Of a stretch of 64,000 nucleotides of DNA, positions 1,668 to 63,875 are shown piece after piece. The notes beneath the pieces are model-generated. The model had not been told where the DNA came from. It was given only the letters and a program-made list of their open reading frames with translations, and did no database searches. The DNA is from Scyliorhinus canicula (Eukaryota), in contig NC_052168.1 of NCBI RefSeq assembly GCF_902713615.1, forward strand, positions 5,704,001-5,768,000. Direction: 5' to 3'. The position numbers were made by a program, and so were the translations under genes. The first letter of the stretch is position 1. Each line of letters begins with the position of its first letter.

Positions 1668-3643
1668 TCAATGTAGGGTGAGCTTGTCAAACAGGTACTC
1701 TCCTGTGCCATTCACAGGGGCTCCCAGTCTCTTCAGGTTGGTGATGTGATCTCCGAGCTTCTTGATCATCTTCACTTGTTCATCCAAGTAGTGAGACTCC
1801 AGGAAGTCACAGAGCTGGAACAAGAGTTAGTAGCATTATTAGTGTGGACCTGGACAGGTATTGGGAGCAGACGTCAGCAATTTAGCCCTTTTGAACCCGT
1901 TCCGCCATTTCATCAGATCATGGTCGATGCCAAATCCACCTCCCCACCCTTTTATCAGAAATAAATCTACCCCTTTCTTGAAACCATTTAAATGATTCAG
2001 ATTCCACCGCACTATGGGGTAGTGAGTTCCACAAATTCACCAGCCTCTGCAAGGGGTAGTTCCTCCTTCCGTTTCTTTTTAAAAAAAAATGAAAACTTAT
2101 CCCCACCTTTTAAGCCAAACTTGAGGCACGTGGGCGAATTACCCACAAGAGGCACTTCACACAATTGTATTAAACTGGAGTGAAGGAACATATTGCCACC
2201 TCAGAATTAAAGAGTGATCCAGGTTCAGTGTAGGTGATCCTTTGCTTAAAACAGAACAAGTCCTCAAGTGTGAAACAAATCTATGAAGTTCTGCTACAGG
2301 GTGAATTGCAGATTACAATATCAGCTCCAACATCACGTGAGAAAGAGTTTACAGAACTCACATGAGGGTCAGTGTTCCCAGAGGAGAGTTTGTGCAGATC
2401 CAGCAGACTCTGGTTCACATTCTTCTCCATCTGCAGAGCTCTCTGCATTGCCTCCAGACCATTGCTCCACTCATCCTGCTCTGGTTTCTGAAAAAAGGTT
2501 ATGGAGAAGGTTTTACTGCAAAACTGAGAAATTTAAAGACTGCAACAACCTCAATAAAAAGGTTCCTATCTAAAGCATTGGGTTCTAATCGAGTAGATGA
2601 GAGGGGACAGCAGGATCTCAAATGAACCTCAACTCCACTATCTCCAAGTTCATGGGTCAAAGATACTTAATCTCACTGGAGAAAATGGGATGTGGGAGTC
2701 ACTGGCTGGGCCAGCATCTATTGGGCTATTCCCAATACCAAGTAATCAAAGTTGCATTTCAGAAGACTCCAGGTTAAAATCCAACCTTGACATCCTCCAG
2801 GATGATGCGGCCTCCACGTTTATTCTGGAATTCCATCAGTTTCTCAGCGTGTTCCCGTTCCTCATGTGACTGCTCCTTGAAGAACTCAGCAAAGTGACGC
2901 AGAGCAAGATCATCCCGGTCAAAGTAAGAGGACTGCAGGTAGAGACAGTGGGAGAGAGGCAGGTCAGACCCCAATCTATCAGACTCACCTCACACGTCCC
3001 TGACCTCAATGCTGGCCACTAATTAGGGGGCCTGAAACTAAATTGTTTTATCAATGCTTTTCCTCAGTATGTTCTAACCAATCCCTGTGGATGGTGGGAG
3101 GAAACCCACAGTCACCAAAAGTCAGAATTAAACCCGGGATCCTGCCGATGTGAGGCAGCAGTGCTAACCACTGTGCCAAGTAATAATGCTTTTTGGATTG
3201 AAGTTTGTGGACCAAAATGAATTACAGCCTTTCTCACACCAATGGTGGAAAATAGAAAATCCTTCAAATTCAGTATACCAGCCAGCCAATTACATTTAAT
3301 TGCTCCTCTTCAATTGGAAAAGAGAGGTTTAGGTATCTTCAAACTAATCCTTCTACCAGAAACGTCATAGAATCCAGGAGTGAAAAAAGGGACAAACTCC
3401 TATCTGAAGTGTTTAATCTATTCAGTCTGGGGAGGGAATATATCTAAAGCCAACTCATTAACCTAGGGAAACTACCTGCTCAGAAAGAAACATAGCCACT
3501 GGCTTAAATTGAAAACAGGCCTCCCAAAATACAAAACTCACCATGGAGAGGTAAACATAGGAGGAATAGAGCTCCAGGTTGATCTGCTTGTTAACAGCAT
3601 CCTCACAGTCCTTGTGGTAGTTCTGACGCACCTGGGAAGCCAT
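1668..3643 (-). CDS. Ferritin heavy-type subunit, copy 1 (173 aa, 4 exons)
   Basis: Exons 3643-3542, 2932-2786, 2487-2362, 1814-1668, all GT-AG, phase 0. Protein [26 protein letters not shown]...[13 protein letters not shown]...LFDKLTLH*. Ferroxidase ligands E24,Y31,E58,E59,H62,E104,Q138 present. AATAAA on minus strand at 1607-1612. Confidence 0.96.
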
Positions 3644-3705
3644 CTTACTGGTTAATGGCCCAAGTCAAACAGCAACAACATGAGCTTGGTCCTCACAAGC
3701 TCTTG

Positions 3706-3855
3706 TATTTATACAACTGGGACATCCGGCATTCAACCAGGGAATGACATCACCAATGATGATTGACAATCTCTGATAGCCAATCAGGAAATTGCCATGA
3801 ATCCAGGCACCAATTAATCAATGAGAGGGGGTTGGGTGTGACACTCAGAGCCAAT
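3706..3855 (-). promoter_or_regulatory. Core promoter of ferritin copy 1
   Basis: TATAAATA at 3713-3706; TGACATCA CRE/AP-1-like box; four CCAAT boxes at 3753, 3780, 3810, 3851; TGATAG GATA motif abutting the second CCAAT; CACACCC box. Same layout in the other copies. Confidence 0.8.
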
Positions 3856-61486: not shown

Positions 61487-63362
61487 GTCAATGTTGTGTG
61501 TTAGATGATTCATTTTATGGTCAACTTTCAATGTGGCTGAAGGCTCTCGGGAGAGATGTCACCGATGGCACAGTTGACCCACCCGAAGAGAAAGTGTATC
61601 CGGGTATTTACACCGATTCTGGTGAAAAAGGATCCGAGATGCAGCGACTGTCCTGTGGTCAGAAAGGGCTTTGTCCAAACTGAGGGACATCACATGGTCA
61701 CTCAAATGGCCATCCAAGTGGGCACGAGAGACTTTGCTGAAGGTCTGGGTTACTGATGCTGAGGGAACTGCTGATTGATCCTTTCCACAGGAAACTCTTT
61801 GAATTCAATATCACAACCTGTAGGGAGTGGGGATGGGGATGGGGATGGGGATGAGAAGCTCAGAGTGGTGCAGAGAATAACAAACACTGACAGTGACCAG
61901 AAATTGTGAGTGATGCTGAGACAGGAACATGGAATGACTGAAACACCATGGTTTCCTCGAATTCCCTTTATTATTGTGTTGTGGCTTCACACATCCTCAA
62001 TTTTAAGAAGCCCTCCTGGTGTGCAGCATATTCAGCCCCTCCACTGCCCATTCCGTTGCTGCATTCTCACACCACTTACTGGTAGTTGACTGAAAATTCA
62101 TTATAGACAGTGCAGATCTCAACAATGTTCCTGAAACTAGTTTATAAACATGGATAACTGCAGGAGTGGCATCAATGTTGAATCCACTCCGAGTGCTCTT
62201 TCCAAGGACTGTGCAGACTGGATGGGCCGAATGGCCTCCTCTGCACTGTAGGGATTCTTTCTATTTATAGGGGCAAAGGAGACAAATAATGGCCCACTGG
62301 GATGAATATTATCGGTTATGAAATGCTTGATGCCCAAACCTAAACAAATACTTATTTTGGAGATGGGTTAGGGGAAATTAATGGAAGGTGTTTGTTAAGT
62401 CACATTTATAGGATGTGACTGGTCTTTGGCTGGATCACGGAGGGAGAATTCAGAGGGCAACTCAAGTACATCTTTTAGTACACGTGGGTGGAAAATCCAC
62501 ACAGACACTGGGAGATTGTGCAGACGTAGACAGACTTACACCAGGAACCAACCAAGGTCCCTGGTGCTGTGAAGTAACAATGTTAACTACTATGCTAACA
62601 TGTCACCCTTTGAAATGGTAGCAGTCGTGGATTTAGAGAGCATTGTCTAAGTAATCTTGGTGAGGTACTGCAGTGCATCTTGTAAATGGTACAGATGGCT
62701 ACTACTGTGCATCAGTGGAGGAGTGTTTGAATGTTTGTAGAAGGGGGAAGTAACCAAGCAGGCCTGCTTGTCTTGGATGGTGTTGAGCTTCTGAGTGTTG
62801 TTGGAGCTGCGCTCATCCAGGCAAGTGGAGAGTATTCCATCACACTCAATTTGTCAGTGAAGCAGCTTTGGGAGGGGGTGAGGATGTGGATTCTCACCTT
62901 AGGATTCCTAGCCTTTGAGCTGCTCTGGTAGCCACAGTATTAATGTGGCTAGTCCAGTTTCTGATCAAGTGGTAACCCCCAGGATATTGACTGATTCGTA
63001 ATCACACCCTGCTCAGTGCTAAATCATTCAGACCATCAAACTGCACTGAAATATTAAAAAAAACAGTGCTATGTGAACCCATTCATGGTTGAGATGTGGA
63101 GTGTACATGGAAATTAAACCTTCACCATGATCATGAAGAATGATGCTCAGACATCACATAGCTTGTATGTAACTGGGTGCAATATGAACTATGTCAGGAA
63201 ATAAAGGGGATTTCAAGTTTACAAGGAGGCAAAATAGTCATTTATTTACAGTTATGATGCTACAAGACCAGGTCCCGATTGCAACAAGACATGAGAGAAT
63301 TTGGTTTTTGCCTTCAATAATCTGGTTCCACCAAACAGAACAAGATTGTTCCCACTGTCAGT

Positions 63363-63875
63363 TCAGTCACTGTCCCCCAGGGTGAGCTTGTCAAACAGGT
63401 ACTCTCCCGTGCCATTCTCAGGGGCTCCCAGTCTCTTCAGGTTGGTGATGTGATCTCCGAGCTTCTTGATCATCTTCACTTGTTCATCCAAGTAGTGAGT
63501 CTCCAGGAAGTCACAAAGCTGAAAAGAGACAAAACAACATTTCATGTCCAGCAGCAGGCAGAGGATTGTGGGAGCTTCCCTCCAGACAGACGTCAATGTT
63601 ATTCTACCCCTGGAAACTAGGGCAATACCCATCTCACCCAGCCCTTCCCATCAGCAGAAGCAAAGCCATGAGGTTTGGAGAGCCTCCAAATAGTTTCAAG
63701 ACCTACAAGGTTAGGAACTCCAATATACCCCCAGAAATAAAGAACTCACATGAGGGTCAGTGTTCCCAGAGGAGAGTTTGTGCAGATCCAGCAGACTCTG
63801 GTTCACATTCTTCTCCATCTGCAGAGCTCTCTGCATTGCCTCCAGACCATTGCTCCACTCATCCTGCTCTGGTTT
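63363..63875 (-). CDS. Ferritin heavy-type subunit, copy 10 (partial: exons 3-4; 5' part beyond window)
   Basis: Exon 3 63875-63750 and exon 4 63518-63363 intact; ends TLGDSD*; polyA signal 63241-63246. Confidence 0.93.

What the first reader, a model, noticed from the sequence alone, without database searches (positions are those of the whole stretch)
2362..63875. Exon-limited homogenisation: near-identical exons inside unalignable introns
Seen: exon 3 of copy 1 (2362-2487) and copy 10 (63750-63875), 61 kb apart, read identical over 126 nt, and exon 1 of copies 1 and 7 differs at 2 of 102 nt. Their flanking introns lose similarity within a few bases of the splice sites and differ greatly in length (intron 2: 298, 571, 170, 158, 815 nt in copies 1, 2, 5, 6, 7). 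Protein-level selection cannot hold synonymous sites fixed. Inference: ongoing short-tract gene conversion confined to exons, either DNA-level conversion where homology persists or a spliced cDNA donor, keeping subunits of the 24-mer compatible.
Basis: partly seen in the sequence, partly recalled or inferred. Interest (0 to 1): 0.78.

Follow-up and report, generated by a model that had tools for sequence, protein, structure and literature searches.

The report
Shark ferritin array: coding-only homogenisation
Ten neighbouring iron-storage (ferritin H) genes of the small-spotted catshark have almost identical coding exons and core promoters set in introns and UTR-like flanks that mostly no longer align. 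This is a clean new example of the known process of concerted evolution by DNA-level gene conversion.

Summary
The window holds ten intact four-exon ferritin-H genes on the minus strand (the tenth is cut by the window end). Exon 3 of copies 1 and 10 is identical (0/126). Exon 1 of copies 1 and 7 differs at 2/102. The intron-2 lengths are exactly as stated. Only 37 of 507 coding sites vary, and mean dS is 0.054. Introns fall into about six lineages that align no better than shuffled sequence between lineages.

Refinements: similarity stops at the ATG and about three codons before the stop, so the UTR-like flanks are not homogenised. A 135-nt untranscribed core promoter is homogenised. Homologous and non-homologous flanks switch at exons 1 and 2.

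Across 12 shark species the protein core clusters by lineage, while the two C-terminal tail types are shared across species.

Best reading: DNA-level non-allelic conversion and crossover within selection-maintained homology islands. A cDNA donor is disfavoured.

Caveats: the four-gamete and exon-edge signals are weak. Ferritin dS is also low between species. "Ongoing" means a scale of tens of millions of years.

The kind is known. The shark ferritin expansion is published. This scan already reached the same reading about 125 kb away in the same genome.

The parts
1668..3643 (-). ferritin copy c1 (173 aa, tail LTLH*). CDS exons: e1 3542-3643, e2 2786-2932, e3 2362-2487, e4 1668-1814. Introns 609/298/547 nt.
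   Evidence: The 3' half (introns 2 and 3, 3' flank) is unalignable to every other copy. The 5' half is like c2/c3.
7760..9762 (-). ferritin copy c2 (173 aa). Exons: e1 9661-9762, e2 8878-9024, e3 8181-8306, e4 7760-7906. Introns 636/571/274 nt.
13896..15900 (-). ferritin copy c3 (173 aa). Exons: e1 15799-15900, e2 15017-15163, e3 14317-14442, e4 13896-14042. Introns 635/574/274 nt.
20106..22125 (-). ferritin copy c4 (173 aa). Exons: e1 22024-22125, e2 21262-21408, e3 20530-20655, e4 20106-20252. Introns 615/606/277 nt.
   Evidence: Intron 1 is unique. Introns 2 and 3 and the 3' flank are 70-78% identical to c2/c3.
30703..32396 (-). ferritin copy c5 (173 aa). Exons: e1 32295-32396, e2 31235-31381, e3 30939-31064, e4 30703-30849. 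Introns 913/170/89 nt.
   Evidence: The introns are almost unique, but the 1.1 kb upstream is 92-95% identical to c6.
35906..38390 (-). ferritin copy c6 (176 aa, tail LTLGDSD*). Exons: e1 38289-38390, e2 36585-36731, e3 36301-36426, e4 35906-36061. Introns 1557/158/239 nt. This is the most divergent protein.
43314..46086 (-). ferritin copy c7 (176 aa). Exons: e1 45985-46086, e2 44642-44788, e3 43701-43826, e4 43314-43469. Introns 1196/815/231 nt.
50011..52808 (-). ferritin copy c8 (176 aa). Exons: e1 52707-52808, e2 51339-51485, e3 50398-50523, e4 50011-50166. Introns 1221/815/231 nt.
56670..59475 (-). ferritin copy c9 (176 aa). Exons: e1 59374-59475, e2 58034-58180, e3 57057-57182, e4 56670-56825. 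Introns 1193/851/231 nt.
63363..64000 (-). ferritin copy c10, cut by the window end. Exons: e3 63750-63875, e4 63363-63518. Intron 3 is 231 nt.
   Evidence: Intron 3 is 100% identical to that of c8.
3692..3827 (-). core promoter island of c1 (CCAAT-type boxes; TATAAATA at 3706-3713).
9811..9946 (-). core promoter island of c2.
15949..16083 (-). core promoter island of c3.
22163..22275 (-). core promoter island of c4 (carries deletions).
32437..32557 (-). core promoter island of c5 (carries a deletion).
38443..38575 (-). core promoter island of c6.
46122..46253 (-). core promoter island of c7.
52844..52976 (-). core promoter island of c8.
59529..59661 (-). core promoter island of c9.

Best explanation
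This is part of the large, ancient tandem array of ferritin-H genes of sharks (here Scyliorhinus canicula). Its members belong to several old non-coding lineages. Purifying selection on the protein and on the core promoter keeps five short islands per gene similar enough to pair: the promoter (~135 nt) and the four CDS segments (102, 147, 126 and ~140 nt). Non-allelic homologous recombination between array members uses these islands. It acts as short non-crossover conversion tracts and as occasional unequal crossovers or long tracts that start or end inside an island. This copies sequence, synonymous sites included, from copy to copy. Introns, UTRs and spacers have diverged beyond the homology needed, so tracts cannot extend into them and similarity collapses at the island edges. 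What is shown: the island pattern, the mosaic of flank ancestries with switches at exons, and lineage-wise clustering of the core despite trans-specific tails. What is inferred: the molecular mechanism (conversion or NAHR at the DNA level), its rate, and the selective benefit.
For: (1) CDS vs non-coding contrast. 37/507 variable sites; mean dS 0.054, maximum 0.116. Introns of different lineages give no BLAST hit and align like shuffled controls. For properly alignable pairs, exon vs intron p-distance is 0.010 vs 0.199 (c3-c4), 0.036 vs 0.38 (c6-c7) and 0.016 vs 0.084 (c1-c2), with Fisher P from 1e-4 to 1e-35. (2) Sharp edges at splice sites, the ATG and about 3 codons before the stop. (3) An untranscribed core promoter is 0.82-0.92 identical across lineages, next to a 5'UTR-like spacer at 0.37-0.39. 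(4) Mosaic ancestry with switches at exons. c1 shares its 5' half with c2/c3 (intron 1 at 87-89%, upstream at 95-97%) and nothing 3' of exon 2. c4 shares only its 3' half with c2/c3. c5 and c6 share 1.1 kb upstream at 92-95% but hardly any intron. (5) Species-wise clustering. dS within S. canicula is 0.05, against 0.16-0.23 to Chiloscyllium, Rhincodon and Heptranchias. In 72 proteins of 13 species, core identity is 0.942 for same species/different tail type and 0.884 for different species/same tail type. On the core tree the order label needs 6 changes (shuffled 41), while the tail label needs 20 (shuffled 22). (6) The same exon/intron discordance occurs in Heptranchias: Hp_b vs Hp_c differ by 2-6 mismatches per exon with all introns unalignable. 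(7) GC3 is 0.64-0.66 against intron GC of 0.41-0.47, as expected under GC-biased conversion. (8) A published report states that the shark ferritin clusters are syntenic between Greenland and white sharks, so the duplications are at least 250 My old (bioRxiv 10.1101/2024.09.09.611499).
Against: No conversion event is seen directly. The four-gamete signal (18/45 pairs) is weak: 4 of the 10 informative sites are CpG transitions, and all remaining conflicts involve one site. Clustering of variable sites at exon edges (P~0.003) is also present in between-species differences (P~0.005; Fisher within vs between 0.22), so it is not specific to conversion tracts. Between species, homologous introns are also about 3-4 times more diverged than dS (C. 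punctatum vs Rhincodon: introns 64-66% identical, dS 0.11-0.19). So part of the contrast may reflect slow synonymous evolution, or non-orthologous introns. With that calibration the c3-c4 pair is only mildly discordant. Intron orthology across species, the cleanest test, could not be obtained: S. torazame DNA was not retrievable. Only weak similarity links intron 2 of c5/c6 to Rhincodon intron 2 (z 2-4). Islands of 100-150 nt are near the lower limit usually quoted for efficient homologous recombination in vertebrates (my own knowledge). A Heptranchias pseudogene has decayed exons 1-2, so conversion does not rescue every copy.
Confidence: 0.78

Rival explanations
1. Spliced cDNA or RNA-templated conversion. 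Abundant germline ferritin transcripts are reverse-transcribed (LINE RT), or used directly as repair templates. They overwrite exon sequence in other copies, which would explain why introns are untouched.
For: The homogenised parts within the gene body are all exonic. LINE reverse-transcriptase fragments lie in the spacers. Ovary-specific expression of the ferritin cluster is reported for the Greenland shark. The same dS<<intron argument was used to propose cDNA donors for fungal ribosomal-protein paralogs (bioRxiv 10.1101/751792). Diverged UTRs could not be converted even by a cDNA, so their divergence does not exclude this model.
Against: Untranscribed DNA is homogenised too: the core promoter at 0.82-0.92 across lineages, and 1.1 kb upstream of c5/c6 at 92-95%. 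Flank ancestry switches at exons, which needs DNA-level crossover or long tracts. No copy in this window has lost an intron, and there is no processed copy in the window. Short intron ends adjacent to exons are co-conserved within super-groups.
Confidence: 0.07
2. No exchange at all. The copies are young duplicates (age ~ dS 0.05) whose introns and flanks were replaced rapidly by indels and transposon turnover.
For: Intron 1 of several copies contains SINE fragments, and the spacers contain LINE fragments. Intron lengths differ greatly.
Against: Introns 2 and 3 have no repeat matches in the window. In c1, intron 2, intron 3 and the 3' flank are all unalignable while intron 1 and the upstream DNA of the same gene are 87-97% identical to c2/c3. 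This is a block pattern, not scattered turnover. Both tail types are trans-specific, yet the cores cluster by lineage. The clusters are reported to be at least 250 My old.
Confidence: 0.05
3. Constraint or low mutation at synonymous sites of ferritin CDS (codon usage, mRNA features, transcription-coupled repair) keeps dS low without recombination.
For: Between species, dS (0.11-0.23) is also several-fold below the divergence of the few homologous introns found. GC3 is elevated. Differences avoid exon centres both within and between species.
Against: dS still scales with phylogenetic distance (0.11-0.19 within Orectolobiformes, 0.16-0.18 between galeomorph orders, 0.20-0.34 to Heptranchias). 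Within-array dS is 2.5-4 times lower than between species, although the non-coding lineages are at least as diverged. Constraint cannot make cores cluster by species across trans-specific tail types. It may still be a contributing factor.
Confidence: 0.08

Closest known systems
Concerted evolution of vertebrate globin clusters by interparalog gene conversion largely restricted to coding sequence
   Same: A tandem array. Exons cluster by species, while introns and flanks keep older relationships. Chimaeric genes arise by unequal crossover, with junctions in exons.
   Different: Here there are at least 10 copies in 64 kb, part of a family reported at more than 100 copies. Exons are only 102-156 nt. 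Most inter-lineage introns are completely unalignable. A promoter island is included.
Concerted evolution of duplicated ribosomal-protein genes in fungi (bioRxiv 10.1101/751792)
   Same: dS is significantly below intron divergence. Flanks and promoters diverge.
   Different: Those authors favour a cDNA donor and report diverged promoters. Here the core promoter and upstream DNA are homogenised, the genes are tandem, and no introns are lost, all of which point to DNA-level exchange.
Mammalian gene pairs under gene conversion for more than 100 My (BMP8A/B, DDX19A/B, TUBG1/2; PMC2720389)
   Same: Long-lasting regional concerted evolution with elevated GC3.
   Different: In those pairs the converted regions span exons and introns together. 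Here the introns are excluded.
Shark ferritin FTH1/FTL expansion (Greenland shark genome preprint, bioRxiv 10.1101/2024.09.09.611499)
   Same: The same gene family and cluster type. Protein searches here find the same expansion in 12 shark species.
   Different: The preprint reports copy number, synteny, age (at least 250 My) and ovary expression. Neither 'gene conversion' nor 'concerted' occurs in its main text.

Membership tests
Concerted evolution by non-allelic gene conversion / NAHR | Paralogs within a genome are more alike than homologs between species, although the duplication predates the species | tested here: met
   dS within S. canicula is 0.05, against 0.16-0.23 to three other sharks. 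The core protein tree follows species and order, not the trans-specific 173/176 tail type. The age of at least 250 My comes from the literature.
Concerted evolution by non-allelic gene conversion / NAHR | Synonymous divergence is far below the divergence of linked non-coding DNA | tested here: met
   Caveat: the intron/dS ratio is also about 3-4 between species.
Concerted evolution by non-allelic gene conversion / NAHR | Discrete tract boundaries and a mosaic of ancestries along the gene | tested here: met
   Edges lie at splice sites, the ATG and the tail. Flank ancestry switches at exon 2 (c1|c2,3 and c4|c2,3) and at exon 1 (c5|c6).
Concerted evolution by non-allelic gene conversion / NAHR | Statistical evidence of exchange among sites (GENECONV / four-gamete / PHI) | tested here: inconclusive
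   18/45 informative site pairs are incompatible, but 4 of the 10 sites are CpG transitions and the remaining conflicts rest on one site. There are too few variable sites.
Concerted evolution by non-allelic gene conversion / NAHR | Introns and flanks group by locus across related species while exons group by species | tested here: inconclusive
   S. torazame DNA was not retrievable. There are no clear cross-order intron orthologs; only weak similarity links intron 2 of c5/c6 to Rhincodon. The tail type served as a substitute locus marker.
Concerted evolution by non-allelic gene conversion / NAHR | Elevated GC at silent sites of converted regions (gBGC) | tested here: met
   GC3 is 0.64-0.66 against intron GC of 0.41-0.47. 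This feature is not specific.
cDNA / RNA-mediated gene conversion | Homogenisation limited to transcribed, spliced sequence; promoters not homogenised | tested here: not met
   The core promoter is 0.82-0.92 identical across lineages, and the upstream 1.1 kb of c5-c6 is 92-95% identical. The TSS is inferred from the TATA box only.
cDNA / RNA-mediated gene conversion | Occasional precise intron loss, or processed copies acting as donors | tested here: not met
   All 10 copies keep all of the introns that lie within the window, with GT-AG boundaries. There is no intron-less copy in the window.
Ferritin, vertebrate H-type subunit | Ferritin-like four-helix-bundle domain | tested here: met
   Pfam PF00210, E 5e-41. 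The best solved matches for the exon-4 peptide are ferritin heavy chains.
Ferritin, vertebrate H-type subunit | Four-exon, three-intron gene structure | tested here: met
Ferritin, vertebrate H-type subunit | Iron-responsive element in the 5'UTR | tested here: not met
   There is no Rfam match at gathering score anywhere in the 64 kb. The TATA box lies only 57-75 nt before the ATG.

The most novel reading that the evidence does not exclude
The homogenisation of the coding segments is templated by spliced germline (ovary) ferritin transcripts or their cDNA. It would act through tracts shorter than an exon, so that introns survive. That would make this array a vertebrate example of RNA-guided concerted evolution. 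The promoter island would then be kept alike separately, by selection or by DNA-level exchange.
Probability: 0.07. Interest if true: 0.75.

Novelty: new member of a known kind. Interest (0 to 1): 0.4.

Why it matters
The array offers a natural experiment on how little homology sustains germline non-allelic recombination in a vertebrate. Islands of about 100-150 nt stay 97-100% identical, apparently for tens to hundreds of millions of years, while everything between them drifts apart. There is also a practical consequence. Coding-sequence trees of shark ferritins will mislead about duplication history, because they suggest recent species-specific expansions. Only non-coding flanks or the C-terminal tail type keep the older relationships. 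The process itself, coding-limited concerted evolution, is textbook knowledge. The shark ferritin expansion is already published. The finding is therefore a clean illustration, not a surprise.

Tried and rejected
(1) Fetching the S. torazame array for the exon-vs-intron tree test. The gene tables came back but no DNA, because the file is too large. The same happened for C. plagiosum.

(2) Gap-permissive global alignment of introns to estimate K for all pairs. Shuffled controls gave the same identities, so the method is uninformative except to show the absence of homology. A first version crashed (second half) and an earlier script timed out.

(3) The exon-edge clustering of variable sites as a signature of tract ends. 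It was significant, but the between-species control shows the same bias, so I do not count it as specific evidence.

(4) The four-gamete test. It looked positive but is largely explained by CpG hypermutability.

(5) The UTR argument against a cDNA donor. On reflection, diverged UTRs could not be converted by a cDNA either. The argument was replaced by the promoter/upstream and no-intron-loss arguments.

(6) Cross-species BLAST of introns and 3' flanks (Heptranchias, Rhincodon, C. punctatum vs the window). It found no convincing orthologous non-coding DNA apart from the promoter.

(7) An Rfam scan for an IRE or other RNAs found nothing.

(8) Literature searches found no paper on gene conversion in shark ferritins.
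Full report
WHAT IS THERE.
The window has no N. It carries ten ferritin genes in tandem on the minus strand (c1-c10; c10 runs off the window end). I mapped them by BLAST of the c1 exons and refined the coordinates to exact GT-AG splice sites and open frames. Each gene has four coding exons of 102, 147, 126 and 147 or 156 nt.

The products are 173 aa (c1-c5, ending LTLH/LTLD) or 176 aa (c6-c10, ending LTLGDSD). They hit Pfam Ferritin (PF00210, E 5e-41), and the best matches of the exon-4 peptide among solved structures are ferritin heavy chains. 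An exact look-up shows two of them are annotated Scyliorhinus canicula proteins: XP_038639728 and XP_038639673/4, called 'ferritin heavy chain, oocyte isoform-like' and 'B-like'. The spacers contain LINE reverse-transcriptase fragments, and several copies of intron 1 contain SINE pieces.

CHECK OF THE OBSERVATION.
- Exon 3 of c1 and c10 is identical (0/126).
- Exon 1 of c1 and c7 differs at 2/102.
- Intron 2 is 298, 571, 170, 158 and 815 nt in c1, c2, c5, c6 and c7.

Over all copies only 37 of 507 aligned coding positions vary, and most variants are singletons. Nei-Gojobori dS averages 0.054 (maximum 0.116) and dN averages 0.011.

Introns form about six lineages:
- {c2, c3};
- {c7, c8, c9, c10};
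- c4, related to c2/c3 only in introns 2-3 and the 3' flank, at 70-78%;
- c1, related to c2/c3 only in intron 1 and upstream, at 87-97%;
- c5;
- c6, with intron 1 about 72% identical to c7-9 over half its length.

Between lineages BLAST finds nothing, or only SINE fragments. Global alignments score like alignments to shuffled sequence. Similarity ends within a few bases of each splice site. The statement 'unalignable introns' therefore holds between lineages but not within them.

WHERE EXACTLY THE SIMILARITY ENDS.
The homogenised unit is the coding part, not the exon. Upstream of the ATG, the last ~50 nt (5'UTR-like) are only 0.37-0.39 identical between lineages. At the 3' end, similarity stops about three codons before the stop, where the 173- and 176-aa tails differ by a 9-nt indel. 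The 3' flanks do not align between lineages.

A ~135-nt core promoter, by contrast, is 0.82 identical across lineages, or 0.92 without c4 and c5, which carry deletions. It holds several CCAAT-type boxes and a TATAAATA box 57-75 nt before the ATG. c5 and c6 share 1.1 kb of upstream DNA at 92-95%, although their introns barely align. Each gene thus has five islands of high identity in a background of unrelated sequence.

IS THE CONTRAST MORE THAN ALIGNMENT FAILURE?
Where introns align over their whole length, the contrast remains (all):
- c3 vs c4: exons 4/420 (p=0.010) against introns 161/809 (0.199), Fisher 2e-26;
- c6 vs c7: 0.036 against 0.378;
- c1 vs c2: 0.016 against 0.084.

It is not met.

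MOSAIC STRUCTURE.
The segment-by-segment table and the self-comparison show that ancestry switches at exons.
- c1 shares everything 5' of exon 2 with c2/c3 and nothing 3' of it.
- c4 shares everything 3' of exon 2 with c2/c3, but not intron 1.
- c5 and c6 share the upstream kilobase but not the gene body.

c2 and c3 are therefore hybrids of a c1-like 5' half and a c4-like 3' half. This is the product expected of unequal crossing-over inside exon 2, and the 6.1-kb repeat unit indeed runs from exon 2 to exon 2. Further along, a two-unit periodicity appears: 46328-50648 vs 59667-64000 at 99.1%. Exons thus act as the places where homologous exchange begins or resolves, and DNA-level exchange is active in the array.

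OTHER SHARKS.
A protein search finds the same family in at least 12 shark species, with 90%-identity clusters of 127-180 members. DNA was retrievable for three loci:
- Heptranchias perlo (L001, three genes, one a pseudogene);
- Rhincodon typus (L002, four genes, some damaged);
- Chiloscyllium punctatum (L003, one gene).

dS between S. canicula and these species is 0.16-0.23, three to four times the within-array value. It increases with phylogenetic distance. In Heptranchias, two neighbouring intact genes differ by only 2-6 nt per exon while none of their introns align. The phenomenon is therefore not peculiar to the catshark.

Both tail types (173 aa ending in S/N/H/D, all one-step codon neighbours; 176 aa ending in GESD/GDSD) occur in 12 of the 13 shark species sampled, spanning five orders; only the 176-aa type was sampled in Pristiophorus. 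Yet the core (residues 2-167) carries no trace of that split. Mean identity is 0.942 for same species/different tail and 0.884 for different species/same tail. On a maximum-likelihood tree of the core, the order label needs 6 changes (shuffled mean 41), while the tail label needs 20 (shuffled mean 22). Birth-and-death without exchange would give two deep tail-type clades, and these are absent.

A preprint on the Greenland shark genome reports 179 FTH1 and 155 FTL copies in clusters syntenic with the white shark. It dates the duplications to at least 250 My and notes ovary-specific expression. The terms 'gene conversion' and 'concerted' do not occur in its main text.

CAVEATS FOUND BY CONTROLS.
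(a) Variable sites avoid exon centres (0, 5, 0 and 0 sites in the central thirds; P~0.003). This would fit tracts confined to single exons. Between-species differences show the same bias, however (P~0.005; no significant difference, Fisher 0.22). The signal is therefore not specific.

(b) 18 of 45 pairs of informative sites fail the four-gamete test. Four of the ten sites are CpG transitions, and the remaining conflicts hinge on one site.

(c) The only clearly homologous introns found between species (C. punctatum vs Rhincodon) are 64-66% identical, while dS is 0.11-0.19. There are two possible readings. These introns may themselves be paralogous, which is likely when one gene is sampled from arrays of more than 100. 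Alternatively, ferritin synonymous sites may evolve several-fold more slowly than introns. On the second reading the c3-c4 pair is only mildly discordant. The strong evidence then rests on pairs with unalignable non-coding DNA, where the expected dS is at least 0.18 and the observed dS is 0.04-0.12.

(d) With between-order dS of about 0.2, a within-array dS of 0.05 corresponds to tens of millions of years. Closely related genera are not separated on the protein tree. Homogenisation is therefore slow, although identical exons suggest that some events are recent.

(e) A Heptranchias pseudogene has decayed exons 1-2 next to near-perfect exons 3-4. Conversion does not rescue everything.

MECHANISM.
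The best-supported account has three steps.
1. Selection on the protein and on promoter elements keeps short islands similar.
2. Those islands remain substrates for non-allelic homologous recombination.
3. Recombination then erases neutral differences inside them.

Diverged introns, UTRs and spacers can no longer pair, and so they bound the tracts. The elevated GC3 (0.64-0.66 against 0.41-0.47 in introns) fits GC-biased conversion, though it is not specific.

It cannot be excluded for the exons alone. My first argument against it, the unhomogenised UTRs, is weak, because diverged UTRs could not be converted by a cDNA either. Four other points argue for DNA-level exchange:
- the promoter and upstream DNA are homogenised although untranscribed;
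- flank ancestry switches at exons;
- no intron has been lost in any copy;
- intron ends are co-conserved within super-groups.

The suggested benefit, compatible subunits in the 24-mer, was not testable. Dosage of an oocyte-expressed ferritin is an equally plausible reason for keeping many equivalent copies.

COMPARISON WITH WHAT IS KNOWN, AND NOVELTY.
Coding-limited concerted evolution is well known. Examples are the globin clusters (my own knowledge), fungal RP genes and long-lived mammalian pairs. This array is a new, unusually clean and large member of that kind. It has very short islands, fully unrelated introns and a separate promoter island. I found no paper describing conversion in shark ferritins.

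Within this scan, an earlier follow-up on a window about 125 kb away in the same genome reached the same conclusion for nine other copies (s1-243502). Rfam likewise finds no IRE here.

VERDICT.
The finding is of moderate interest.

Noticed in passing
window 7760-15900 (c2, c3) with c1 (1668-3643) and c4 (20106-22125): c2 and c3 are hybrids. Upstream DNA, exon 1 and intron 1 are like c1 (87-97%). Intron 2, intron 3 and the 3' flank are like c4 (70-78%). The switch lies at exon 2, and the 6.1-kb repeat unit runs from exon 2 to exon 2. This is what unequal crossing-over inside exon 2 would produce.
   Followed up: partly
window, 5' regions of all nine complete copies (e.g. 3644-3713, 46087-46143): No iron-responsive element is found: Rfam has no hit at gathering score in the whole 64 kb. 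The TATA box lies only 57-75 nt before the ATG, so the 5'UTR is probably about 30-45 nt.
   Followed up: partly
window 46259-46356 (also upstream of c8 and c9, shorter): A G-rich (C-rich on the gene strand) GGGGGA-type tract of about 100 nt sits just upstream of the c7 core promoter. Its length differs between c7, c8 and c9, and it is absent from c1-c6.
   Followed up: no
window 35906-38390 (c6): c6 is the most divergent copy. It has six private amino-acid changes (R6C, M34I at the last base of exon 1, E50D, R60W, S118A, C127S) and the highest dN. It may be under relaxed constraint, or may be escaping homogenisation.
   Followed up: no
window 47097-47555, 53784-54242, 60449-60907; 22841-23743; 25083-25766; 39809-40591: Reverse-transcriptase fragments (LINE-like) lie in the spacers. 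The RVT_1 hit (E 5e-11) is repeated once per unit in c7-c10. Weak zf-RVT hits lie in the long c4-c5 spacer.
   Followed up: partly
window 46328-50648 vs 59667-64000: These stretches are 99.1% identical over 4.3 kb at a two-unit offset (13.3 kb). One-unit neighbours are only about 93% identical, and c7 vs c9 gene bodies about 89%. This indicates a recent large duplication or long conversion within the c7-c10 block.
   Followed up: no
c2 intron 1 nt 57-107 (window about 9554-9604); L002 Rt_b intron 1 nt 28-80; L003 intron 1 nt 28-79: A ~50-nt stretch near the 5' end of intron 1 is 75-77% identical between the catshark, whale shark and bamboo shark, although the rest of intron 1 does not align. 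It may be a conserved intronic element.
   Followed up: no
L001 (Heptranchias perlo) 163-2067, minus strand: A ferritin pseudogene. Exon 1 has a stop at codon 7 and a 2-nt deletion, and exon 2 is heavily altered. Exons 3-4 are within 1-3 nt of the neighbouring intact genes.
   Followed up: partly
L002 (Rhincodon typus) 3046-5825: A 173-aa-type ferritin gene with a frameshift in exon 2. The Rhincodon copies on this unplaced scaffold are much less homogeneous (5-17 differences per exon) than the catshark copies.
   Followed up: no
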